This document shows, piece after piece, positions 7,235 through 63,245 of a DNA stretch of 64,000 nucleotides; positions within the stretch are counted from its first letter, which is position 1; every line of letters begins with the position of its first letter. The stretch lies in IMG/VR virus record IMGVR_UViG_3300023174_000033, positions 62,001-126,000 of that record; one strand, 5' to 3'. The translations under genes and the position numbers were made by a program. Below the pieces are notes generated by a model. The model saw only the letters and a list, made by a program, of their open reading frames with translations, was not told the DNA's origin and did not search any database.

Positions 7235-8158
7235 CTAGGTAATGCTGAAGTCTTTCAGGTATTTTCTCACAGCAATATCTTTTTGTTTACATTCCAATTC
7301 AATATCAAGTTCAAATCCACAGGAATCAAATGATTCGTATAAAAAATCCGCATGTGCTGATAAAATAACTTTATCATCTTCATGTAATTTTCTAGATGAA
7401 GAATGGTGACAGAGTGGTTTAGTTTTCCAAGTAGATAGACCAAGTTTCAAAGTGTCCTCCCAAGACATATTATCAGGATGACAACTATAATGTAAACTAT
7501 CAACGACTATGGGTATTCCAATTTTAGAATGGACTAGATCATATAACATCTTAACAGAATATTGAGAAGGTTTATCATCATTCTCAATTGTTAACCTGCA
7601 TTTAGTGGACTCTTTCAGTCTATGAAAGTTATCACAAAACCTATTAGCCGCATCGGTGTGTGATGGGGTTGTGACGTTCAGATGAATATTTATTGGGTAA
7701 TAAGTAGATTGTTCCAATCCCATAAGATCCATAAGTTCAGCGTGCTTGTCGAGTTCATCAATAGTTTTTGATACTACATCTTCTTTCTCACTACCAAGAA
7801 CACAAAAATGTGATGGGTGAAAAGATAATCTCATAGAATTTTGTTTCGCGAAATCCCCACAATCTTTCAGTAAAGATTTTATTATTTCAAATTTTGGCAG
7901 ATCTTCAATTTTATAGAACCCCAAACAAGGTAGCATGTCACTAGACATTCTATATACATGGATATTATTATCTAAATTCCATTCAAGGATTTTTTTCAAG
8001 TCTTTTATATTCTGTATAGCAAGTTCTGACACATATCCCAAACCCTTTGATTCAAAGGTTTTTTTCACCATACCTCTATTAACGGATATAAAATCTTTTT
8101 TTTTCTTTCCGATATTCACAGAAAGGTTTATGCAACAATAACCAATATTTTTTTTCAT
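7235..8158 (-). CDS. uvsE: UV-damage endonuclease (UvsE/UVDE family)
   Basis: GYCCIN, YRMSS, RLSFHPSHF, INIH, IENDDK, HAD, ELECKQKD motifs. Confidence 0.93.
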   Translation of the reverse strand: MKKNIGYCCINLSVNIGKKKKDFISVNRGMVKKTFESKGLGYVSELAIQNIKDLKKILEWNLDNNIHVYRMSSDMLPCLGFYKIEDLPKFEIIKSLLKDCGDFAKQNSMRLSFHPSHFCVLGSEKEDVVSKTIDELDKHAELMDLMGLEQSTYYPINIHLNVTTPSHTDAANRFCDNFHRLKESTKCRLTIENDDKPSQYSVKMLYDLVHSKIGIPIVVDSLHYSCHPDNMSWEDTLKLGLSTWKTKPLCHHSSSRKLHEDDKVILSAHADFLYESFDSCGFELDIELECKQKDIAVRKYLKDFSIT

Positions 8159-25347: not shown

Positions 25348-26739
25348 ATGTATATCAAAAATATTCACGAAAAACTCCTCGAATCAATCCAACAGATGTT
25401 GATTGATACCAAGGTAAATTTACCCTACTATGGTAATTTCAACCTTTTTGTAAGTTTCCACGAAAGAAAGGATATGCCAACCTGCGCTGTCAATATGACA
25501 GCAAGTGGTATGAATTTCTATTATAACTCCGAGTTCCTTAATAATCTTTCCCAAAAAGAAGTAAACTTCATTACACTACATGAAGATTTTCACCTTCTTT
25601 GGAACCACCCAAAACGTACTATCACTGGTCAGTACGATCCAAAGCTATCTAACGTAGCACAAGATATGATTATCAATCATATCATTTGGGAGGATATTCC
25701 ACATAGATATGTGGAAATTCCAAAAGACGCACAAGGAAGAAATATGGCACTGTTTGTACCAAAAGAATATCAAGGTAAACTTATCTTTGAGGAACTATAT
25801 GAGTGGCTACGCGATGAAAAAGAAAAGCGTGACAAAGAAAAACAAGAGAATCAATGCCAATCTTGTGACGGCACTGGCAAACAACAAAATGGTAATCAAG
25901 AGGGTGACCAAGAGGGTGAAGGGGAAGATTGTCAAGATTGCCAAGGTTCTGGTCAGAAAGGTGGTGGTCAAACTCCTGGTGATAAATATGGACCATATGG
26001 TAAAGATCCAAAGAACCCAGGCGGTTCTCTTGACACCTGGTCTCTTGACCAAATCCTTGATGATTTGGATAAAAACCAAGGTGAATATCTTGACCACCAT
26101 CTTGGTGATGAAATACCAGAAGAGATGCGTGATTCTGTTATCAAAGACGCTATGGAAAGACTCTCAGCTCGTGGACTCCAAGGTGGTAATATTGAGCAAA
26201 CACTTGGTAAACTAAGGAAGCAAAGAAAGGATTACCTTAAATATATCAAAAGGTCTGTATCAAATATTATCTTTGGAACCACCAAAACAAGAACCATCAC
26301 TCGCCCAAATCGTAGAGGTATTCTTGGTCTTAAAGGTAATAAGAAAATTAAGAATAAGATTAACTGTATCCTTGATACATCTGGGTCTATGGGAGGAACG
26401 TTTGAAAGAGTACTTTCTTATATCTACAGAAATGATATTGAGGTAAATCTTATTGAAGCCGACACAGAAGTAAAGTGGGTTGAGAATATCAAATCCAAAA
26501 AGAAACTTGAAAGCGTTAAGATTGCCGGCCTTGGTGGAACAATGTTGATGCCAGCTGTGAAGTATGTTGAAAAACACTTCAACCAGTACAATACTCTTAT
26601 CATCACTGATGGATATTGTGATAGTCTTGACCTTTCAAAACTTCAAGGAAATGTACTATTGATTTCAATTGGGGTTGAGGTTCCTATAAGTAAATCAAAC
26701 GGTAAGGTCAAGCAAATCAAAGTAGACCCAGATCAATAA
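25348..26739 (+). CDS. DUF2201-type metallopeptidase-like + VWA domain protein
   Basis: HEDFH (HExxH), N.AQD..IN, two CxxCxGxG motifs, MIDAS DTSGSM, GGGT-like GLGGT, TDG. Confidence 0.85.
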   Translation: MYIKNIHEKLLESIQQMLIDTKVNLPYYGNFNLFVSFHERKDMPTCAVNMTASGMNFYYNSEFLNNLSQKEVNFITLHEDFHLLWNHPKRTITGQYDPKLSNVAQDMIINHIIWEDIPHRYVEIPKDAQGRNMALFVPKEYQGKLIFEELYEWLRDEKEKRDKEKQENQCQSCDGTGKQQNGNQEGDQEGEGEDCQDCQGSGQKGGGQTPGDKYGPYGKDPKNPGGSLDTWSLDQILDDLDKNQGEYLDHHLGDEIPEEMRDSVIKDAMERLSARGLQGGNIEQTLGKLRKQRKDYLKYIKRSVSNIIFGTTKTRTITRPNRRGILGLKGNKKIKNKINCILDTSGSMGGTFERVLSYIYRNDIEVNLIEADTEVKWVENIKSKKKLESVKIAGLGGTMLMPAVKYVEKHFNQYNTLIITDGYCDSLDLSKLQGNVLLISIGVEVPISKSNGKVKQIKVDPDQ

Positions 26740-33899: not shown

Positions 33900-33928
33900 A
33901 AAAAAGGTCTTAAATTAAGACCTTTTTT
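33900..33928. terminator. Bidirectional intrinsic terminator
   Basis: AAAAAAGGTCTTAA-A-TTAAGACCTTTTTT between convergent units. Confidence 0.85.
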
Positions 33929-33978
33929 GTAGCCGAAGCGGGAATCGAACCCGCACGTCCTTGCGGACAAAGGATTTT

Positions 33979-34673
33979 CTTACTACTATAGTTTTCACTA
34001 CCCTTTCGGTTTGTAGTCTGGACTATACCTTAACCTTATCTTACGACTTAGGTTCTCCGTGTCTAGTCTCTACACCTTCTTCATTTCTGAAGCTTGGCTC
34101 GGTATTCCCATTTTAAAGGGTTCACCGAATTTACGGAGTTCTACTCAGAGATTTTCACCTCTGGCACTCATATTTTTCGCTCGATAGTTATCTGTAAATG
34201 AGTGGCAGTTTGGACATAATAATTGTATATTTTCAATTCTATTGTCAAATCTATCACCATTTATGTGATGTAGTTCAAGTGGGATATCAGAATCTAACCA
34301 TTTTGTCAAATTACACTTTACACAAACAGGTTCCATAATTTTCAACTTAAGAAGCTGATTCTTCAATTTATATGAAGAATAAGGTAAACCTGATGAATAA
34401 CATGAATTTTGAACCAATCTTGATGACAAATCTTTATTTTTTGACCAAGTCTTTCCTTTACTCCAAAGTTGGCCATGAAAATGAGAAGTGTCTAATCCAA
34501 ATTGTTTAATTCTAGTTTTTATATTCTGATAGTTTCCACCAGCTTCTTTAAGTCCAAGTTTTTGTAAAACTTGTCTAACAGAATAACACTCACTAACTAT
34601 AAGTTCTAAATTTTCTTTTGTATATTTATTGTTCATACATTATATATAAAAAATAGAATACAAAAAAAGAACC
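33979..34673 (-). mobile_element. Group I intron (IC3-like), 695 nt, in the tRNA-Leu anticodon
   Basis: Follows U34 and ends in G. IGS GAGTGCC (34169-34163) pairs with exon GGACUU. P AAATTCGGTGAA, Q AATACCGAG, R GTAGAGACTAGA, S GGTATAGTCCA. P3 CTCCGT/ACGGAG; P7 GACTA/TAGTC. Confidence 0.9.
34145..34636 (-). CDS. Intron-encoded HNH homing endonuclease
   Basis: CVKC...LELHHINGDRFDNRIENIQLLCPNCH; N-terminal helical DNA-binding-like segment; lies wholly inside the intron. Confidence 0.9.
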   Translation of the reverse strand: MNNKYTKENLELIVSECYSVRQVLQKLGLKEAGGNYQNIKTRIKQFGLDTSHFHGQLWSKGKTWSKNKDLSSRLVQNSCYSSGLPYSSYKLKNQLLKLKIMEPVCVKCNLTKWLDSDIPLELHHINGDRFDNRIENIQLLCPNCHSFTDNYRAKNMSARGENL

Positions 34674-34769
34674 AAGTCCTTCGTGTATACCAGTTTCACC
34701 ATCCGGCCATAATTAAAATTATATAACTTTTTTAGACATAAGTTTTTTTTTTAAAAAAAGTATAAAAAA

Positions 34770-36646: not shown

Positions 36647-39600
36647 TTATTTGTATAATATTGTACCTGTTGTGGATGAGGAGAATGTTACCCCAAACGA
36701 ATTAACATCATTGTGAATTATACTAATTGGATTTATTACACTGTTATTAGTATCTAGTATCTGAACGATCGGGAAATATCCTAAGTTGTGTTGGACAAGG
36801 TATTCCGTACCACTGTTGAGTCCTGTGCCATCCAATGAATAACTACATCCAACTAGACTCGGTAACCAAGTTAATTGACCAATACCGTTTACTCCAATTG
36901 CAAAACTCGCAGATCCTCTAACATAATTCAGATTGACCCAACTATTTCCTATGGTGATACTGTTTGACGCACCATACTCAACACTGTTGCTTTCCAAGTG
37001 TATGTAAGGACCACTACCAGCTGTTGAACCGTCAATTAAATCAGATGCGGATACTTCAATTTTCGCCTCAAATGAAGGTGGATCAATATGAGAACCTCCA
37101 ATTATGTATTTACTTCTAATCTTAACTCTTTCCTCAACATCAACATTCGATATTGGGGCTTGGTAGAAATCCGATCTAGAATTATTAATACCAACCCCAG
37201 CTAATCCACCCGATACAAAATTTTCCCTACTTGAGTAAACTGCTGGATATAATTCGTTTGTGGTGTGGTCGTATTTGCTAGCACTTGGGTTAAATCCAAT
37301 AAGACCAGATGATTCAAGTACAAATGCGTATTCACTATTAGCCAAAGTCGCGCCTTTTATGTATCCATCTGTCGTTGAGTTGGAAATTTTAATTACATAA
37401 TCACCATCGTAAGACCATGAAGCGGTATTTCCAATTGTTAGAGTTTGGTCAAATGTGTAGATTGGAGCTGGTCCTTGTGGACCTGTGTCACCTTGATCGC
37501 CTTGAGGTCCCATCTCACCTTGTTCACCTTGTGGGCCCATCTCGCCTTGGTCACCTTGTGGGCCCATCTCGCCTTGGTCACCCTGTGGCCCCATTTCGCC
37601 TTGGTCACCCTGTGGCCCCATCTCACCTTGGTCACCCTGTGGCCCCATCTCACCTTGGTCACCCTGTGGCCCCATCTCACCTTGGTCACCCTGTGGCCCC
37701 ATCTCACCTTGGTCACCCTGTGGCCCCATCTCGCCTTGGTCACCCTGTGGCCCCATCTCACCTTGGTCACCCTGTGGCCCCATCTCACCTTGGTCACCCT
37801 GTGGCCCCATCTCACCTTGGTCACCCTGTGGCCCCATCTCACCTTGGTCACCCTGTGGCCCCATCTCACCTTGGAATCCTTGAGGACCAGTTACTCCTTG
37901 TACACCCTGGACACCCTGTAGACCCTGTGGACCAGTTATTCCTTGAACACCTTGGAATCCTTGTGGGCCAATCATACCTTGATGCCCTTGTGGGCCGAAA
38001 TCACCTTGGAATCCTTGTGGACCAGTAACACCTTGGAAACCTTGTGGACCGGTTGATCCCTGTGGACCAGATAGCCCTTGAAGACCTTGTGGACCAGTCA
38101 TACCTTGGAAACCTTGAGGACCGGTATCTCCTTGATATCCTTGTGGGCCCGTATTACCAAATGGCATGAAAGTGAAATTATAAATACTGTTAGGATAGAA
38201 TTGACCATTTGAGACAACAGGAGAGGAAAGACTCAACCCATAAACATTATTACTCTGTATTAGATTAACACCATAAACTGGGTAAATACCAACATTACTA
38301 GCTGTCAAAGCATCGGATACCTGTATCCATGTATTAATACCCTTATCAACAAATGTTTTTAGTGAATTAAACCAACCAGAGTAGTTTACCCCGTTGACAT
38401 CAGTTTTGTGAATTTTCAGATAATCATTCAGAGCGAAATTTGCATCTTCAATATCAAACTTACCAGTAGCAACACTGCCATTATCTAAACTCTCACATCT
38501 CCACTGTACCACAGTTTGTACTAAAGAAGTAACGGTTCCTTGTGGTCCTTCCAAACCTTGGAATCCCTGTGGACCCATATCACCCTGTGGACCACTTACA
38601 CCTTGGAAACCTTGTGGACCAGTCTCACCCTGTAATCCTTGTGGACCACTATAACCTTGAGGGCCAGTCATACCTTGTGGACCAGTCTCACCCTGTAATC
38701 CTTGTGGACCACTATAACCTTGAGGGCCAGTTACACCCTGTAATCCCTGTGGGCCAATAATACCCTGAAAACCTTGAGGGCCAGTTTCACCCTGTGACCC
38801 TTGAGGCCCAGACAACCCTTGAACCCCCTGTGGACCAGTATCACCTTGATTACCTTGGGGACCACTGTAACCCTGTGGACCACTGTAACCCTGTGGACCA
38901 AAATCACCTTGGAATCCTTGCGGACCTGTAATTCCTTGAACACCAGTTGATCCAGTTGATCCAACCGAACCATTAGCCACCCAAGTTACGTTATAAAGTT
39001 GCTCAGCAGCGAAAGATCCACTTGAAACAACAGCGGTTGAATCCACTTTAACAGAGTAGGTTGTGCCGTTGCCGGTCACACCAGTTACTCTATATAGCCC
39101 TGTATTACTTGGAGTTAAAGCATCGTAAATTTGTAGATAACTAGTGTTTTCATTTTGAACAAATATTCTAAGTTGATCAAACCATAATGAGTAATCTACA
39201 CTTTGTATATCTTGTTTATGGAAATTAAATTCTGAATTATTAGCAAATGTATTATTTTCAGAACTGAAATAATTTGGGTTATTTAATAGAGGATTGAAAC
39301 CTTTATACTTCCACTGGACAATTGTTTGCACTAATGACACAACCGAACCTTGGTCACCTTTGTATCCTTGTGGACCTGTTTCGCCCTGTGGACCAGATAA
39401 TCCCTGTAATCCTTGTGGGCCAGTATTACCTTGGAATCCTTGTGGGCCAGTATTACCTTGAACACCTTGAAAACCTTGAGGACCAATATTACCTTGATTA
39501 CCTTGTGGACCAGTCATTCCTTGATTACCTTGTGGACCAGTCATTCCTTGGAAACCTTGTGGACCAGTCATTCCTTGGAAACCTTGTGGACCAGTTTCAC

Positions 39601-42600
39601 CCTGTGACCCAGTATTTCCCTGTGAACCTTGAACGCCTTGGAAACCTTGTGGACCAGTCATTCCTTGATTACCTTGTGGACCAGTATTGCCTTGCAAACC
39701 TTGTGGACCAGATAAACCTTGAGGGCCAGTCACACCTTGCAAACCTTGTGGACCAGATAAACCTTGAGGACCAGTCACACCTTGCAAACCTTGTGGACCA
39801 GATAAACCTTGAGGACCAGTTCTTCCGAATGGTATCCAAGTAACATTGAAAACACTGGTTGGATTTAGAGTTCCGTTACCAACGATTTTATTCCCAACGT
39901 TAATAGTGTATTTAGGATCCGTGTAAGATAAACTACTAACTGGAAATAAACCAGTGTTACTTACTGTTAGCGAATCGTAAACTTGTATATAAGCTAAACT
40001 TCCACCGTCTACAAATCCTTTTAATTGGTCAAACCAATCGTTATAATCAACACCATTTATATCAAATTTATTGAAAACAAACTGTGTTGGTGGTGATGTA
40101 GTGAAGTTCGAACTGTTTGATTCAAATCTTCCATTCGGAAGTGATCCACCTATCAATCCGTCATATCTCCACTGCACAATTGTTTGCACCACCGAAACAA
40201 CTACACCCTGTGGTCCGGTATCACCTTGTAGTCCTTGATTACCCTGTGGGCCACTGAATCCTTGTGGACCAGTTACACCTTGATATCCTTGTGGACCAAA
40301 TTTTCCTTGTGGTCCTGTATCACCTTGTAATCCTTGTGGACCAGATAATCCTTGTGGACCTGTCTCCCCTTGGAATCCTTGCGGACCGGTGTTACCCTGA
40401 AAACCCTGTGGACCAGATAGACCCTGAAGACCTTGTGGGCCACTGAATCCTTGTGGACCGGTGTCACCTTGATACCCCTGTGGACCCGTATTACCTTGTA
40501 GACCTTGTGGGCCGGTGTTACCCTGGAATCCTTGAGGACCTGTATCACCTTGATAACCTTGAGGACCCGTATTACCTTGTAGACCTTGCGCGCCGGTGTT
40601 ACCCTGGAATCCTTGTGGACCAGTCATACCTTGTAACCCTTGGGGACCAGTCATACCTTGTAACCCTTGTGGGCCGGTGTCACCTTGATAACCTTGTGGA
40701 CCACTATATCCTTGCGGGCCAGTCTCACCTTGGAAACCTTGTGGACCAGTCTCTCCCTGAACGCCAGTTGAACCGGTGCCCCCAACTGAACCATTAGCAA
40801 CCCATGTTACGTTGTATAGTTGTTCAGTCGCAAAACTACCATTTGAAACAACTGCTGTAGAATCAACAGATACAGAATAAGTTGTCCCGTTGCCGGTCAC
40901 ACCAGTTACTCTATATAGCCCTGTATTACTTGGAGTTAAAGCATCGTAAATTTGTAGATAACTAGTATTTTGATTCTCAATGAATATTCTTAATTGTTCA
41001 AACCAAAGAGAATAGTCAACACTTTGTATATCTTGTTTATGGAAATTAAATTCGTTATTACTACCAAATGCAGGATTTTGTGAACTGAAATAATTTGGGA
41101 ATGATCCTAATGGATTCGTACCTTTGTATTTCCACTGAACAATTGTTTGCACTAATGACACAACCGAACCTTGGTCACCTTTGTATCCTTGTGGACCAGA
41201 ATATCCTTGTGGACCAGATAAACCTTGCACACCTTGTGGACCTGTCTCACCTTGGAAACCTTGTGGACCTGTCTCACCTTGGAAACCTTGAGGGCCAGAT
41301 AAACCTTGAAGTCCCTGAGGCCCGGTCATACCTTGGAAACCCTGTGGGCCAGTTGAACCTTGATATCCTTGTGTGCCAGTGTTTCCTTGTGGACCTGTAT
41401 CACCTTGCAAACCTTGTGGACCAGTTGAACCTTGAAACCCCTGTGGACCAGATAATCCCTGTAAACCTTGTGGACCAGATAAACCTTGTAGTCCTTGTGG
41501 ACCGGTATCACCTTGGAAACCTTGTGGGCCGAAATCACCTTGGAAACCTTGTGGGCCTGTAACTCCTTGTAGTCCCTGGGAGCCACTGTATCCTTGTGGA
41601 CCAGTTATTCCTTGGAAACCTTGGGGTCCTGTTTCACCTTGATATCCTTGAGGACCTGTATTACCTTGAGATCCTGTGTTGCCCTGTGGACCTGTATTAC
41701 CTTGGAATCCTTGAGGACCTGTATTACCTTGGAATCCTTGAGGACCTGTGTCGCCTTGATAACCTTGTGGACCACTAAAACCCTGTGGACCAGTGTCACC
41801 TTGTGGACCAGTTGGTCCGGTAGCACCTATGGAACCATTTACGAACCAACCAATGTTATATATGTTGTTACCTGTAAACGTGCCACTACCAACTATAGCT
41901 GGAACGTCTGTAAAGATATAGTAGCTATGGGTACTAAATACTTGAGAAGGACTTGTCTGTGTAGCAGCAAGAACTTTGTAGAATCCAGTTATACTCTGAG
42001 TTGTTGAATCATAGATTTGTAAGTATGAAGGATTTTCATTATTAACAAACTTTTGCAATTGATCAAACCAGAGTGAATAACTAACTGAGTTGATATCCCT
42101 AAATTCAAATCTGAAATAAGGGTTAGTTGGTAAATCAATACTACTAGTTTCAAAATAACCTTGGGTTAGGCCGCCACCCAATAAACCACCATACTTATAT
42201 TGTATTATGGTTTGGACCATGGAAACAACTAATCCGTCAACTCCTTGTGGGCCGGTATCACCTTGGAATCCTTGTGGGCCAAAGTCTCCTTGGAATCCTT
42301 GAGGTCCACTAAATCCTTGGGTGCCTTGTGGGCCGGTATCGCCTTGTGAACCTTGTGGGCCAGATAATCCTTGTGGACCAGTGTTTCCTTGATATCCTTG
42401 TGGACCAGTGTTTCCTTGATATCCTTGTGGGCCAGATAATCCTTGATGTCCCTGTGGACCAGTGTCTCCCTGTGATCCTTGTGGACCAGTATCTCCTTGA
42501 AAACCTTGAGGACCAGTGTCTCCCTGATAACCCTGCGGACCACTTTCGCCTTGAAAACCTTGAGGACCAGTGTCTCCCTGATAACCCTGCGGACCGGTAT

Positions 42601-45196
42601 CACCTTGATAACCCTGCGGACCACTTTCTCCTTGATAACCCTGCGGACCAGTATCACCTTGATAACCCTGCGGACCAGTATTACCTTGGAATCCCTGTGG
42701 ACCACTTTCTCCTTGAAAACCTTGCGGACCAGTATCACCCTGATATCCTTGCGGACCGGTATCTCCCTGTAGTCCCTGTGGGCCAGTATCACCTTGATAT
42801 CCCTGTGCCCCCTGTGGGCCAGTATCACCTTGATATCCTTGCGGACCGGTATCACCTTGAAATCCTTGATCACCTTGTGGGCCAGTATCACCTTGTGATC
42901 CCTGTGGGCCAGTATCACCTTGATAACCCTGTGGGCCAGTATCTCCTTGAAATCCTTGATCACCTTGTGGGCCAGTATCACCTTGATATCCTTGAGGACC
43001 GGTATCTCCCTGAACGCCTTGAGGACCAGTCTCACCTTGGAAACCTTGAGGACCAGTCTCACCTTGAACACCAGTTGAACCAGTACCACCAAATGATCCA
43101 TTAGCAACCCAAGTAACATTATAAACTTGTTCTGTTGCGAAACTTCCATTTGACACTAATGCGGTTGAGTCAACCGAAATTGAATAAGTTGAACTTCCAT
43201 ATGTAACACCAGTCACTCGGTATAGACCAGTGTTACTGGATGTTAAAGCATCATATACTTGTAAATAACTTACATTTTGACTATCTACGAAAGTTAAGAG
43301 TTGTTGAAACCAAACTGAATAATCTATGGATTGATTATCTAGTTTATTGAAAATAAATTCACTATTACTAGCAAAAGTAGGTTGATCGGAAGTAAAATAT
43401 TTTGATACCGGTTCAGTTGCTGAATTTAGACCTTGGTATTTCCACTGAACAACAGTTTGAACTAATGAAACAACAACCCCCTGTGGACCTTGTTCACCTT
43501 GAGTTCCGGAAAAACCTTGAGGACCGGATAATCCTTGAACACCCTGTGGGCCAATTTCCCCTTGTGGGCCACTTTCTCCTTGAAAACCTTGCGGACCAGT
43601 ATCACCTTGATGCCCTTGCGGACCAGTATCACCCTGTAGTCCCTGTGGACCTGTTTCACCTTGATACCCCTGTGCCCCCTGTGGACCTGTTTCACCCTGG
43701 TAACCTTGTGGGCCAGAAATACCTTGCACACCTTGTGGACCAGTTTCTCCTTGGAATCCCTGTGGGCCGGTATCACCTTGATATCCCTGTGGACCTGATA
43801 AACCTTGTAGTCCTTGTGGACCCGTCAAACCTTGTGGACCAGTTAAACCTTGATAACCCTGTGGGCCAGAAAGTCCTTGTGGACCCGTGAAACCTTGTGG
43901 GCCTTGTGGACCGGTGTCACCTTGATAACCTTGAACTCCGGTTTCTCCTTGCCAACCTTGTGGACCAGAAACACCTTGAGGACCTGTAGTGCCTTGGAAA
44001 CCTTGAACACCAGTACTGCCCTGCCATCCTTGTGGACCAGAAAGTCCTTGTGGACCAGTAACACCCTGGAAACCTTGAACACCAGTACTACCCTGCCATC
44101 CTTGTGGACCAGATAACCCCTGTAATCCTTGTGGACCAGTAAAACCTTGATATCCTTGCACACCAGTGTTTCCCTGCCATCCTTGTGGACCAGATAAACC
44201 CTGGAATCCTTGTGGACCAGTCATACCTTGATATCCTTGTGGACCAGATAACCCCTGTAAACCTTGTGGACCTGTATCACCTTGCAAACCTTGTGGGCCG
44301 GTTCTACCTTGGAATCCCTGTGGACCAGTTCTACCTTGATAACCTTGAGGCCCAGATAAACCTTGAAAACCCTGTGGGCCACCAGAACCTTGAGAACCAG
44401 TGGCACCACCACCGGTTATAATCTTACCACTGAATTGTTGGTCAAAAGTAACAACGTAAGTATCTGTACTAATATAATTAACAGAATATGAAGCTGGTTG
44501 AATGTTTACGTTACCATTGGAGGTATCAACTGCTTGTACTAGTGGATATCCATTGAAACTATGTGTAACAGTAACTTGAGTTTTATTAGAAAAGTCTGTT
44601 ATAAAATTTGAGACAGCATCAAGACCTCTCGGACCTTGAACACCTTGTGGTCCACTCAAACCCTGAAAACCAGTATTGCCTCTACCTGGGTTTGTAGCCC
44701 AACCAATTGTATAGGTTCTCCCATCTACAAATACACCACCAACTGCAATTGGTTGCACATTTAGATCAAACCCCGTAAATCCATCATCTACAATATTTGT
44801 TACTTGAAAAAGAGCTCTGTTTAGAGGGTCTTGATCTTCAACTATATTTAAATAACTTATTTGTTCACGGTCAACAAAAACTTTCAATTGTTGTAACCAA
44901 GGGGAATAATCCACACCATAAAGGTCAATATATTGAATACTTAAAGAAGTAATAAATTCAGGATCGTCATTATTTGCAACAAATTTTTGTATGGTTGTAA
45001 GATTACCACCAGCTAGATATTTCCATTTTGATGAAGGTGAAGATAATTGCACTACCACGCCCTGTGGTCCTGTTTCGCCCTTTGGTGGTAAATCTACCGG
45101 ATTCCCAAATCCATCGTAGAATTCATTTCCGTTTATAACTTGTACTAATCGTTGATATGTACCTGATACGGTTGTTCCGGTTAAATTATATGACAT
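36647..45196 (-). CDS. Giant collagen-like fibre protein with seven interspersed globular repeat domains
   Basis: 2849 aa; long (Gly-X-Y)n runs dominated by GPQG; repeated ~125-aa '[13 protein letters not shown]...YNVTW' domains; TAATATATAG upstream. Confidence 0.9.
37500..37875 (-). repeat. Near-perfect 27-bp tandem repeat (about 13 units, GPQGDQGEM)
   Basis: Unit CCTTGGTCACCCTGTGGCCCCATCTCA on the + strand repeated with few substitutions. Confidence 0.9.
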
Positions 45197-62349: not shown

Positions 62350-62646
62350 TCAGTTATATTTATCTAATTCTAAAAGTTGATTTATTTTTTTGTCCCTAAG
62401 TTTGTTTTTTATCAAGTCATAACTAAGTATGAAGTGTTTATACATTTCTTCTTCTGTAAAATATGATAAATTTCTATAATCTCCATCAAGTCCAACAGCA
62501 TATCCAAATCCTTTTTTATCAGTAGCATTGTTCCAAGTCAAATCACCACACCCACTTATTCTATAAGTGCATCCATACTTCATGGGCAAGATTTCATTAA
62601 AACAATAAATACTATCCCCTACTTCAAATCCAATTTCTTTTTTCAT
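62350..62646 (-). CDS. Small hypothetical protein with C-terminal RDKKINQLL motif
   Basis: 98 aa. Confidence 0.55.
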   Translation of the reverse strand: MKKEIGFEVGDSIYCFNEILPMKYGCTYRISGCGDLTWNNATDKKGFGYAVGLDGDYRNLSYFTEEEMYKHFILSYDLIKNKLRDKKINQLLELDKYN

Positions 62647-63245
62647 CGGTTTGTATCTGATTCGTGGTGGTCAATAAATTTTATATCAATCTTATCCATG
62701 ATCTTGAAGATTTCATTTATATGGTAGGGTCTAAACTCTGGGTGAGTATCTACCCCAACATCCATAGACCTACCAATCCCCTTTAGACTTCCGTGGCTGT
62801 GACCAAAAAGATGTATAACACCTTTGTGTGAAGCTGGCCATACTTGATGTGAGTAATGTGATAGGTGGAACTCCCTTGAACCAATTTTACCAGTAAAGAC
62901 ATTTTGAACAGATTCAAAAAGGTCCATTGGATTAAAAGAAGTATCATGAAATTTAATTTCTTTGTTTGTGATGTGTTGGTCGTGGTTGCCCAACATTAGG
63001 TGAATGTTTTTGCAGATAAGTGATTTTCTAAAGTAGTAGATATTGTGGACACCCCCAAAGCTCCAATCACCTAGGTGATAAAGAATATCATCTTCACCAA
63101 CAACATTGTTGATGTTCTTAATAAGTGTATCGTTCATTTCTTGAACGGAATTGAAGTTTCTATACCCATCTTTCCAAGAAGAAACTTTAGGACCAGCAAT
63201 ATTGGTATGTCCGAAATGAGTGTCTGATGTAAACCATATGTTCAT
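62643..63245 (-). CDS. Calcineurin-like metallophosphoesterase
   Basis: SDTHFGH, LGD, GNHD, GHSHG, DVGVD motifs. Confidence 0.9.
   Translation of the reverse strand: MNIWFTSDTHFGHTNIAGPKVSSWKDGYRNFNSVQEMNDTLIKNINNVVGEDDILYHLGDWSFGGVHNIYYFRKSLICKNIHLMLGNHDQHITNKEIKFHDTSFNPMDLFESVQNVFTGKIGSREFHLSHYSHQVWPASHKGVIHLFGHSHGSLKGIGRSMDVGVDTHPEFRPYHINEIFKIMDKIDIKFIDHHESDTNR

What the first reader, a model, noticed from the sequence alone, without database searches (positions are those of the whole stretch)
33930..34708. Phage tRNA-Leu(UAA) carrying a group I intron with an HNH homing endonuclease in loop L1
Seen: the tRNA is split between U34 and A35 by 695 nt. The last ~190 nt form a compact group I core (P/Q/R/S, P3, P7, terminal G). 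The 163-aa HNH ORF sits between the 5' splice site and the IGS, and its final codons double as the IGS (GAGTGCC) and the P2 hairpin (CAGAG/CTCTG). The phage's TATATA motif lies inside the intron just upstream of the HNH ATG. Known: this U^AA site is the one used by cyanobacterial/plastid trnL(UAA) IC3 introns, which normally have no ORF. Inference: this is a mobile, endonuclease-armed version in a phage. It could home into intron-less trnL alleles of co-infecting phages or cut the host trnL gene, and tRNA supply would depend on splicing.
Basis: partly seen in the sequence, partly recalled or inferred. Interest (0 to 1): 0.8.

Follow-up and report, generated by a model that had tools for sequence, protein, structure and literature searches.

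The report
Endonuclease-carrying self-splicing intron in phage tRNA-Leu
A 465-kb lake phage carries a leucine tRNA gene split in its anticodon loop by a self-splicing-type (group I) intron that also encodes a DNA-cutting enzyme, and I found no published description of this kind of mobile tRNA intron in phages although it is common in viral metagenomes.

Summary
On the minus strand, tRNA-Leu(UAA) (34708-33930) is split between U34 and A35 by a 695-nt intron (34673-33979).

The last 191 nt are a complete group I core. Its helices are 96.8% canonical across 103 homologous tRNA-Leu introns, and 36 of 45 pairs show compensatory changes.

The 163-aa ORF (34636-34145) has an N-terminal helix-turn-helix and a C-terminal HNH domain. 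It lies in loop L1. Its last codons are the internal guide sequence and P2, and its stop codon lies in the 3' strand of P2.

The element is not unique. Capped scans found 124 intron-bearing tRNA-Leu(UAA) genes in viral contigs: 81 short, 34 long. The same HNH family sits in L1, P6 or the 3' region of different introns. In 10 of 11 isolate or huge-phage records checked it lies free-standing among or beside tRNA genes.

The best reading is a tRNA-gene-targeting homing endonuclease lodged in a formerly ORF-less tRNA-Leu intron. Splicing and cleavage remain untested, and no intron-less allele of this exact tRNA was found.

A 2014 review states that all phage introns then known were in protein genes, and I found no later description of this combination. 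I rate it a new variant of a known kind.

The parts
34674..34708 (-). tRNA-Leu(UAA) 5' exon, 35 nt: acceptor 5' strand, D arm, anticodon-stem 5' strand, C32 U33 U34. The last bases ACUU (34677-34674) form the 5' strand of P1.
   Evidence: ARAGORN -i; sequence; P1 pairs conserved, with U.G in 102 of 103 homologues
33979..34673 (-). Group I intron, 695 nt, ending in the terminal G at 33979
   Evidence: boundaries match 124 homologous viral tRNA-Leu introns
34637..34673 (-). 37-nt AT-rich leader inside L1. It holds ATATATAA (34647-34640), whose first base lies 11 nt upstream of the ATG. No Shine-Dalgarno sequence is present.
34145..34636 (-). 163-aa ORF with an N-terminal three-helix HTH and a C-terminal HNH (beta-beta-alpha-metal) nuclease with a CxxC...CxxC zinc site. 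It lies in loop L1 and overlaps the IGS and P2.
34163..34169 (-). Internal guide sequence GAGUGCC, the 3' strand of P1, read as codons AUG AGU GCC of the ORF tail
34146..34163 (-). P2 hairpin: 7 bp plus a GAAA tetraloop. The ORF stop codon UGA (34147-34145) lies in its 3' strand.
   Evidence: P2 covaries among ORF-bearing relatives while the protein tail changes
34055..34138 (-). P3 (34138-34133 with 34060-34055) enclosing P4 (34129-34124 with 34103-34098), P5 (34120-34118 with 34109-34107), P6/P6a (34098-34074) and the 5' strand of P7, GACUA (34068-34064)
34021..34054 (-). P8 (34054-34050 with 34036-34032, GUAA loop) and the 3' strand of P7, UAGUC (34025-34021), which closes the P3/P7 pseudoknot
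   Evidence: P7 99.6% canonical, with covarying pairs
33979..34017 (-). P9 domain: closing helix ACUAC/GUAGU (34017-34013 with 33986-33982), two small hairpins with GAAA loops, then AAG with the terminal G at 33979
33930..33978 (-). tRNA-Leu 3' exon, 49 nt: A35 A36, anticodon-stem 3' strand, long variable arm, T arm, acceptor 3' strand, A73. CCA is not encoded.
33900..33928 (-). Intrinsic-terminator-like hairpin (13-bp stem plus a T run) directly after the tRNA

Best explanation
This is a functional composite mobile element inside a phage tRNA gene. Shown: the element belongs to the same intron lineage as the cyanobacterial tRNA-Leu(UAA) group I introns (textbook-classed as subgroup IC3). It interrupts the phage's tRNA-Leu(UAA) between U34 and A35. 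Its 191-nt core carries P1 to P9, the P3/P7 pseudoknot, GAAA tetraloops on P2 and P9, a U.G pair at the 5' splice site and a terminal G. Inferred: the precursor splices itself with a guanosine cofactor. P1 forms over about 520 nt between the exon end ACUU and the guide GAGU. The exon-exon anticodon stem substitutes for a weak P10, as established for the Anabaena intron. Splicing releases a tRNA that reads UUA, the phage's commonest leucine codon. Shown: loop L1 holds a 163-aa HTH+HNH protein under purifying selection, and its last codons and stop codon are the IGS and P2. Inferred: a ribosome finishing the ORF and a folding ribozyme therefore exclude each other on one RNA molecule. Inferred: the protein nicks or cuts intron-less tRNA-Leu(UAA) DNA of co-infecting phages, possibly also host DNA, and recombinational repair copies the intron and ORF into the cut gene (homing). 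Inferred from context: the endonuclease descends from free-standing endonucleases of phage tRNA gene clusters and entered an ORF-less intron.
For: tRNA and intron boundaries. Rfam group I hit above gathering. Homologous ORF-less intron at the same site in huge phage LR756501, and a homologous HNH lying in P6 in LR756511. Covariation on 103 unique sequences: 96.8% canonical, 36 of 45 pairs with double changes; slid controls give 28-42% and column shuffles 75%. P2 covaries among ORF-bearing relatives while the encoded tail changes (ARGENL, ARGETL, ARS, AKKEIS, AR), so RNA structure is the constraint. HNH residues H124, N136 and H145 and cysteines C105, C108, C141 and C144 are invariant. dN/dS is 0.09-0.20. 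More than 2,262 homologues exist, and all seven loci checked at 71-76% identity lie in 693-696-nt tRNA-Leu(UAA) introns in different gene neighbourhoods. Intron identity exceeds exon identity (90.1% against 72.6% for L066; intron higher in 80 of 102 comparisons). The nearest cores to the window are ORF-less viral introns. Intron-less phage and metagenome tRNA-Leu genes carry an identical 20-34 nt around the insertion site. The HNH family lies among or beside tRNA genes in 10 of 11 isolate or huge-phage records checked, directly abutting a tRNA-Leu gene in six. TTA makes up 31.5% of Leu codons.
Against: No splicing evidence exists for this phage. The one read-laying run showed only unspliced RNA-library contigs of a 93% relative, which could be DNA carry-over, and contiguous tRNA-Leu pieces that belong to other organisms. 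The Rfam score is barely above threshold, and its P1 alignment uses a local 7-bp hairpin that relatives do not conserve. The Pfam HNH models score below their cut-offs. No solved homing endonuclease is a close match. No intron-less allele of this exact tRNA was found (0 hits for a 29-mer), and no close relative genome was found (next best flanking protein 60% identical). A 520-nt L1 could slow P1 formation.
Confidence: 0.75

Rival explanations
1. Safe-harbour model. The HNH is a tRNA-cluster endonuclease whose cleavage site is not the intron insertion site. It might cut a neighbouring tRNA sequence or the intron itself. ORF and intron would then move independently, and the intron merely makes the ORF's insertion harmless.
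For: The same HNH family (35-50% identity) occupies L1, P6 or the 3' region in different tRNA-Leu introns. In isolate phages it is free-standing between tRNA genes of several specificities, including Gln/Arg, Glu/Gly, Phe and Asn. The nearest cores to the window are ORF-less.
Against: Homologues at 71-76% identity all keep the same L1 position in the same tRNA-Leu(UAA) site across different genomes. In Dulem virus 42 the ORF alone sits at the same post-CUU position of a tRNA-Leu-like gene. Six of eleven records checked abut a tRNA-Leu gene. Together these point to the tRNA-Leu anticodon region as the target.
Confidence: 0.2
2. Weapon model. The main role is phage-phage exclusion or host shut-off. 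The HNH cuts intron-less tRNA-Leu(UAA) genes of the host and of competitors, while the phage's own copy is protected because the intron splits the recognition site.
For: Bacterial-looking intron-less tRNA-Leu(UAA) genes with encoded CCA share an identical 34 nt or more around the site. Marker exclusion by intron HNH enzymes is established for SPO1/SP82 (my recollection of Goodrich-Blair and Shub 1996).
Against: Nothing here links the enzyme to host DNA. The host is unknown; Bacteroidota is only suggested by SD-less genes and TAnnTTTG motifs. The idea also overlaps with, rather than excludes, ordinary homing.
Confidence: 0.12
3. Dead element. The ribozyme or the ORF is defunct and the tRNA-Leu is a pseudogene.
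For: Splicing is unproven. The very long L1, the overlap of the ORF with IGS and P2, and a window-specific 7-bp hairpin (CACUCAU/AUGAGUG) that could sequester the guide might all impair folding.
Against: Every core helix in the window is canonical and fits a strongly covarying family. The ORF is intact, with invariant catalytic residues and dN/dS near 0.2. The tRNA cloverleaf, A73, the long variable arm and a terminator are all in place. This tRNA decodes the phage's commonest Leu codon.
Confidence: 0.05
4. Assembly artefact: a chimeric metagenome contig joined a tRNA half, an HNH gene and an intron.
For: The source is a metagenome-assembled 464,605-bp contig.
Against: The identical protein is on 3 contigs. 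An independent run holds 99% of the sampled words and others hold 0.66-0.67. The same architecture recurs in dozens of independent contigs.
Confidence: 0.01

Closest known systems
[quoted passage not shown] 1990, Kuhsel et al. 1990, as cited in PMC3984707)
   Same: Identical insertion site (U34|A35). The core is homologous and alignable, with the same helices, the same GAAA tetraloops and the same reliance on the exon anticodon stem. Four cyanobacterial sequences were in my alignment and tree.
   Different: Those introns carry no ORF and reside in cellular or plastid genomes. This one is in a phage and carries a 163-aa HNH gene in L1. The cyanobacterial sequences form their own clade, and the window groups with viral introns.
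Synechocystis tRNA-fMet group I intron encoding I-Ssp6803I (Bonocora and Shub 2001, cited in PMC3984707)
   Same: [quoted passage not shown]
   Different: A different tRNA, a different (non-HNH) endonuclease fold by my recollection, and a cellular rather than viral host.
Phage group I introns with HNH endonucleases (I-HmuI and I-HmuII of SPO1/SP82, I-BasI of Bastille, I-TwoI of Twort, I-TevIII)
   Same: Phage-borne group I intron plus an HNH homing enzyme. ORFs may run into core sequences, with controlled expression (PMC3984707).
   Different: All of those lie in protein-coding genes, and by my recollection their introns are of other subgroups. By my recollection I-HmuI has HNH at the N terminus and DNA-binding modules at the C terminus, whereas here the order is HTH then HNH. 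No sequence match to any solved structure.
T4 SegB and HNH genes inside phage tRNA clusters (PMC2330249; PMC6409571)
   Same: Homing-type endonucleases living among phage tRNA genes and driving inheritance of the tRNA region. The window's HNH family is found in exactly such free-standing positions in isolate phages.
   Different: SegB is GIY-YIG and free-standing. The window's copy is inside an intron within a tRNA gene.
Lak megaphage tRNA introns (Devoto et al. 2019, PMC6784885)
   Same: Introns in tRNA genes of huge phages. That paper says phage tRNA introns had not been reported before, to its authors' knowledge.
   Different: Those were called enigmatic, lie in other tRNAs (Tyr, Thr) and were not assigned to a class in the text I read. 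No ribozyme or endonuclease was described.

Membership tests
Group I intron (Rfam RF00028) | Covariance-model score at or above the gathering threshold | tested here: met
   51.5 bits against 50; E 5.7e-12 local, 3.5e-10 whole window. This is marginal, and the model's P1 is misaligned to a local hairpin.
Group I intron (Rfam RF00028) | P1 formed by the exon end and an internal guide, with a U.G pair at the 5' splice site | tested here: met
   U34 (34674) pairs with G34169. The U.G pair is present in 102 of 103 homologues, and P1 is 94.9% canonical.
Group I intron (Rfam RF00028) | Core helices P3-P9, including the P3/P7 pseudoknot, supported by covariation | tested here: met
   45 pairs are 96.8% canonical and 36 show compensatory changes. 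Controls give 28-42% (slid) and 75% (shuffled).
Group I intron (Rfam RF00028) | Terminal G before the 3' splice site | tested here: met
   G at 33979; it is G in every sequence displayed from the alignment
Group I intron (Rfam RF00028) | Guanosine-initiated self-splicing | not testable with these tools
   Needs an in vitro transcript, or raw RNA reads across the exon junction. One search gave no clean spliced read for this allele.
tRNA-Leu(UAA) IC3 intron lineage | Insertion between U34 and A35 of tRNA-Leu(UAA) | tested here: met
tRNA-Leu(UAA) IC3 intron lineage | Core homologous to the cyanobacterial and other bacterial tRNA-Leu introns | tested here: met
   Aligns helix for helix with 41 bacterial introns, 4 of them cyanobacterial
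tRNA-Leu(UAA) IC3 intron lineage | Compact core with no P5abc and no P7.1/P7.2; P2 and P9 capped by GNRA loops | tested here: met
   191 nt from the IGS to the terminal G; the helices are listed in parts
tRNA-Leu(UAA) IC3 intron lineage | Formal subgroup call by subgroup-specific models (GISSD or the 2025 database) | not tested
   Those models are not available here. IC3 is inferred from homology and architecture.
HNH (beta-beta-alpha-metal) homing endonuclease | His...Asn...His catalytic motif with two CxxC zinc ligand pairs | tested here: met
   H124, N136, H145 and C105, C108, C141, C144 are invariant in 42-45 homologues. The model shows beta-beta-alpha at residues 121-145.
HNH (beta-beta-alpha-metal) homing endonuclease | Pfam HNH or HNH_3 at the curated cut-off | tested here: not met
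   21.2 against 24.8 and 18.9 against 21.4 bits. PHROG 10822 'HNH endonuclease' matches at E 7.6e-48, so the shortfall reflects a short domain rather than absence of the motif.
HNH (beta-beta-alpha-metal) homing endonuclease | Site-specific nicking or cleavage of the intron-less allele | not testable with these tools
   Requires a biochemical assay
I-HmuI-type intron HNH enzymes | N-terminal HNH followed by C-terminal DNA-binding modules, with detectable sequence or fold similarity | tested here: not met
   The domain order is reversed (HTH at 7-46, HNH at 105-155). No PDB sequence hit. Foldseek's best match is McrA at E 0.2, and no intron endonuclease appears among the 50 matches listed.
Class II tRNA-Leu | Cloverleaf with a long variable arm, UAA anticodon and A73 discriminator | tested here: met
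   ARAGORN model. The anticodon stem is 98.8% canonical in the family. CCA is not encoded.

The most novel reading that the evidence does not exclude
Phages carry a large, previously unrecognised pool of tRNA-Leu(UAA) group I introns, some armed with a tRNA-gene-targeting HNH that hops between intergenic tRNA-cluster sites and different intron loops. This pool would be the mobile reservoir that seeds the ORF-less tRNA-Leu introns scattered across bacterial phyla, possibly including the cyanobacterial and plastid lineage long regarded as ancient and immobile.
Probability: 0.25. Interest if true: 0.8.

Novelty: new variant of a known kind. Interest (0 to 1): 0.62.

Why it matters
The 2014 review of bacterial group I introns states that all phage introns then observed were in protein-coding genes, despite the many phage tRNA genes (PMC3984707). 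The 2019 Lak-phage paper called phage tRNA introns enigmatic (PMC6784885). This locus shows what at least one class of them is: a self-splicing-type intron of the tRNA-Leu(UAA) lineage carrying an HNH homing enzyme.

The class is abundant. Capped scans gave 124 viral loci, and the enzyme has more than 2,200 homologues.

It provides a concrete vehicle for horizontal spread of the tRNA-Leu intron. That makes the old question of whether this intron is ancient and vertically inherited or mobile directly testable.

It offers natural examples of one endonuclease family in three intron positions and in intron-free tRNA-cluster sites, which is a good system for studying how endonuclease genes colonise introns.

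In practice, standard tRNA and Rfam scans miss these genes, so phage tRNA repertoires are under-counted.

Tried and rejected
1. Rfam's own P1 assignment (CACUCAU...AUGAGUG, 34205-34165) was rejected. The upstream arm is the conserved Cys-His-Ser/Thr-Phe codons, the exact 7-mer complement occurs only in the window, and the true P1 partner is the exon end.

2. Reading the TATATA motif as a proven promoter was not accepted. Its association with gene starts is real, but at 11-14 nt from the ATG it is too close to act as a classical -10 element with a leader. Its role (promoter or translation-initiation region) stays open.

3. The search for spliced RNA was inconclusive. RNA-library contigs cover exon 3, the core and the ORF of a 93% relative, unspliced. 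The contiguous tRNA-Leu pieces differ in sequence and belong to other organisms, one being tRNA-Leu(CAA).

4. No intron-less allele of this very tRNA was found. The exact 29-mer gave 0 metagenome hits. Looser patterns found many intron-less tRNA-Leu(UAA) genes, but at most about 86% identical overall. No intron-plus and intron-minus pair above 88% exists in my sample.

5. No close relative genome was found. Megablast of 24 kb against the phage collection hit only the intron core, and the flanking 467-aa protein has no relative above 60%, so synteny could not be used.

6. PDB sequence and fold searches gave no informative homing-endonuclease relative.

I removed that row and did not send that sequence anywhere else.

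8. Rfam at E 0.001 on the three comparison loci returned nothing, although they clearly hold homologous introns. This is filter loss, not absence.
Full report
OBSERVATION

The feature lies on the minus strand. Default ARAGORN and Rfam at gathering threshold on the whole window miss it. ARAGORN with intron search returns a tRNA-Leu(UAA) whose anticodon loop is split gactt|aaaat by 695 nt. The coordinates are 5' exon 34708-34674, intron 34673-33979 and 3' exon 33978-33930.

The tRNA has a class II long variable arm, G18G19, a TTCGATT T-loop and an A73 discriminator, and it does not encode CCA. A 13-bp terminator-like hairpin with a T run follows it directly.

Rfam's Intron_gpI model matches 34205-33997 at 51.5 bits against a gathering score of 50. 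The E-value is 5.7e-12 locally and 3.5e-10 on the whole window. It is the only group I hit in the 64 kb.

The ORF 34636-34145 encodes 163 aa.

THE SOURCE GENOME

The window is part of a 464,605-bp viral contig from a lake metagenome. GC content is about 32%. It carries T4-type topoisomerase II genes and other phage genes.

Its genes lack Shine-Dalgarno sequences, and several are preceded by TAnnTTTG. From general knowledge this pattern suggests a Bacteroidota host, but that was not tested. No close relative exists in the phage or IMG/VR collections.

THE RIBOZYME

The core is 83-87% identical to an ORF-less intron at the same site of tRNA-Leu(UAA) in the 735-kb phage LR756501. Related cores interrupt the capsid gene of Pelagibacter phage HTVC120P and lie in or beside protein genes of other phages.

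Two capped pattern scans of IMG/VR followed by ARAGORN gave 124 intron-bearing tRNA-Leu(UAA) genes:
- 81 introns of 185-263 nt
- 9 of 297-499 nt
- 34 of 603-1087 nt

A capped scan of bacterial genomes gave 55 more tRNA-Leu(UAA) introns in Pseudomonadota, Acidobacteriota, Cyanobacteriota, Bacteroidota and other phyla. It also found the same core in tRNA-Met, Ser, Phe, Arg and Thr genes.

I aligned 61 viral ORF-less introns, 41 bacterial introns and the window's intron with the L1 insert removed for alignment only. RNAalifold recovered the tRNA stems and P1-P9.

For helices defined on the window sequence, 45 pairs are 96.8% canonical over 103 unique sequences, and 36 pairs show changes on both sides. 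Sliding the 3' partner by 1-3 columns gives 28-42% canonical. Shuffling within columns gives 75%, with a maximum of 76%.

P7, the pseudoknot strand pair GACUA/UAGUC, is 99.6% canonical and covaries. The U.G pair at the 5' splice site is present in 102 of 103 sequences. The terminal G is G in every sequence displayed from the alignment. P2 and P9b carry GAAA tetraloops, and there is no P5abc or P7.1/7.2.

Taken together with the shared insertion site, this places the intron in the tRNA-Leu(UAA) lineage, which is textbook-classed as IC3. A formal subgroup model was not available.

P10 is at most 1-2 bp. As established for Anabaena (Zaug et al. 1993, cited in PMC3984707), the exon-exon anticodon stem probably takes over that role. 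That stem is 98.8% canonical here.

THE ORF AND ITS PLACE

ORF-less relatives have 8-14 nt between the 5' splice site and the guide GAGUGC(C).

The last codons, AUG AGU GCC AGA GGU GAA AAU CUC UGA, are the guide sequence (34169-34163) and a canonical 7-bp P2 with a GAAA loop (34163-34146). The stop codon lies in the 3' strand of P2.

Among ORF-bearing relatives P2 covaries: CAGAGGU/AUCUCUG, UAGAGGG/CUCUUUA, CAGAAGC/GCUUCUG, CAAGAAA/UUUCUUG and UAGAUAA/CUAUCUA. The encoded tail changes or is truncated in step. The RNA helix is therefore the selected feature, which argues that the ribozyme is in use in ORF-carrying introns.

The local hairpin that Rfam took for P1 is not conserved.

THE PROTEIN

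PHROG 10822 'HNH endonuclease' matches at E 7.6e-48. The Pfam HNH models score just below their cut-offs.

More than 2,262 homologues exist. Residues H124, N136 and H145 and the four cysteines are invariant. dN/dS against five relatives is 0.1-0.2, although dS is saturated.

An AlphaFold model (pLDDT 84) shows an N-terminal three-helix HTH (residues 7-46), a loosely modelled linker and a C-terminal beta-beta-alpha zinc domain. Foldseek finds only HTH regulators and generic HNH enzymes such as McrA, Gme and Cap5, all weakly. There is no sequence match in the PDB.

EVIDENCE BEARING ON MOBILITY

(a) Homologues at 71-76% identity, taken from seven loci, all lie in 693-696-nt tRNA-Leu(UAA) introns. 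Their gene neighbourhoods differ, and some sit inside dense tRNA arrays.

(b) The same family at 35-50% identity sits in P6 or in the 3' region of other tRNA-Leu introns. In LR756511 its stop codon is the UAG of the conserved GUGUAGAGACU.

(c) The window's core is closest to ORF-less viral introns: 90.1% identity from guide to terminal G for L066. The exons of the same genes are only 72.6% identical. The intron is more similar than the exons in 80 of 102 comparisons.

(d) Intron-less tRNA-Leu(UAA) genes with an identical 20-34 nt around the insertion site occur in 94 IMG/VR loci and in more than 120 metagenome contigs.

(e) I checked eleven isolate or huge-phage records holding the family. In ten of them the ORF lies free-standing among or beside tRNA genes: S-CRM01, Michonne, Atu_ph07, phiSA12, LCK69, Vibrio D69, Rhodococcus Dorin, Gordonia GodonK, Enterococcus 113 and LR745208. 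In six of those it directly abuts a tRNA-Leu gene.

(f) The eleventh record, Dulem virus 42, has the ORF alone, without a ribozyme, splitting a tRNA-Leu-like gene at the same post-CUU position.

HNH genes in phage tRNA clusters have been noted before and compared with T4 SegB (PMC6409571, PMC2330249).

WHAT IS NOT SHOWN

Splicing and cleavage are both untested. The single read-laying run gave no clean spliced junction for this allele. It did show that the core family is 30- to 150-fold deeper than the flanks in one lake DNA run, so ORF-less cousins are abundant there.

No intron-less allele of this exact tRNA was found.

MECHANISM (BEST READING, CONFIDENCE 0.75)

The precursor is made. Exon ACUU pairs with GAGU across L1, guanosine attacks after U34, and the exons are ligated after G33979. 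The product is a tRNA for UUA, which makes up 31.5% of the window's Leu codons.

The HNH protein is made either from the precursor or from its own transcript. The recurrent ATATATA[AG] motif begins 11 nt before its ATG, as it does before other phage genes at 11-14 nt. Translation of the last nine codons and formation of P1/P2 cannot coexist on one molecule.

The enzyme then nicks or cuts intron-less tRNA-Leu(UAA) DNA, and repair copies the element in.

The rivals are the safe-harbour model (0.2), the exclusion or host shut-off weapon model (0.12), a dead element (0.05) and an assembly artefact (0.01).

NOVELTY

All the component parts are known. I did not find the combination in the literature I could search. 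The combination has three elements:
- a phage tRNA gene as the host of a group I intron
- an HNH gene in the tRNA-Leu(UAA) intron lineage
- one endonuclease family alternating between intron loops and tRNA-cluster intergenic sites

The 2014 review says phage introns known then were all in protein genes. The 2019 Lak paper reports unclassified phage tRNA introns. The 2020 huge-phage paper, which is probably the source of the LR7565xx records, does not mention introns.

I rate this a new variant of a known kind, with interest 0.62.

Noticed in passing
L650:1392-2009 (Dulem virus 42, PP511876.1): A tRNA-Leu(UAA)-like gene is split after CTT by about 530 nt that hold only an HNH ORF of the same family (46% identical) and no ribozyme core. 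The 3' half starts ATAATCTG, one change from AAAATCTG. It is either an endonuclease-only insertion at its own target or an intron that lost its ribozyme, and the tRNA is probably dead.
   Followed up: partly
L646-L649 and L651-L656 (isolate phages S-CRM01, Atu_ph07, Michonne, phiSA12, LCK69, Vibrio D69, Dorin, GodonK, Enterococcus 113, plus uncultured huge phage LR745208): The same HTH+HNH family lies free-standing among or beside tRNA genes, often filling the gap between two tRNA genes to the base. In Dorin the ORF is 998-1438 between tRNAs ending at 997 and starting at 1439. In S-CRM01 the annotated HNH CDS overlaps the annotated tRNA-Leu.
   Followed up: partly
window, 25 sites, e.g. 9399, 10517, 34647(-), 45210(-), 45623, 63287: ATATATA[AG] recurs 11-14 nt or 24-31 nt upstream of ORF start codons (13 of 25 sites). 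A TTATATAA also begins about 18 nt upstream of the tRNA-Leu 5' end. This is probably a phage-specific expression signal, of unresolved type.
   Followed up: partly
window, upstream of ORFs at 7235-8158(-), 15903, 23379, 25348, 28987, 29665, 62643-63245(-): Genes lack Shine-Dalgarno sequences and several have TAnnTTTG-like motifs, the pattern of Bacteroidota promoters. This hints at a Bacteroidota host for this 465-kb phage.
   Followed up: no
L003:1779-2953 (Pelagibacter phage HTVC120P, MH598807.1): The capsid gene is annotated as two CDSs separated by about 190 nt. That gap is 79.5% identical to the window's intron core and ends at the same terminal G context: an unannotated ORF-less group I intron in a capsid gene.
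   Followed up: partly
L232-L351 (bacterial genome contigs): The same intron core (AGGTGYAGAGACTHGAC) interrupts tRNA-Leu(UAA) in many non-cyanobacterial phyla, and also tRNA-Met, Ser, Phe, Arg, Thr, Asn and Leu(CAA/AAG) genes. Some tRNA-Met introns of 640-660 nt carry unrelated ORFs.
   Followed up: partly
window 33976-34163, run X4: In one lake DNA run the assembler depth over the intron core is 200-1000, against about 4-7 over the flanks and the ORF. Many other genomes in that lake carry near-identical ORF-less cores.
   Followed up: no
window 34165-34205 (-): A perfect 7-bp hairpin, CACUCAU (the Cys-His-Ser codons of the HNH motif) with AUGAGUG, overlaps the guide sequence. It could compete with P1. 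The exact 7-mer complement was found only in this phage, not in its relatives.
   Followed up: yes
window 25348-26739 (+): A second, unrelated 463-aa HNH endonuclease gene (PHROG 1314, E 9e-48). Its context was not examined.
   Followed up: no
window 36647-45196 (-): A 2,849-aa ORF with markedly higher GC (41-46% against about 32% elsewhere). It was not examined.
   Followed up: no
L655:840-1667 (Enterococcus phage 113): ARAGORN proposes a tRNA-Ala split by 743 nt that enclose the HNH gene. This may be spurious or another tRNA intron. It was not checked.
   Followed up: no
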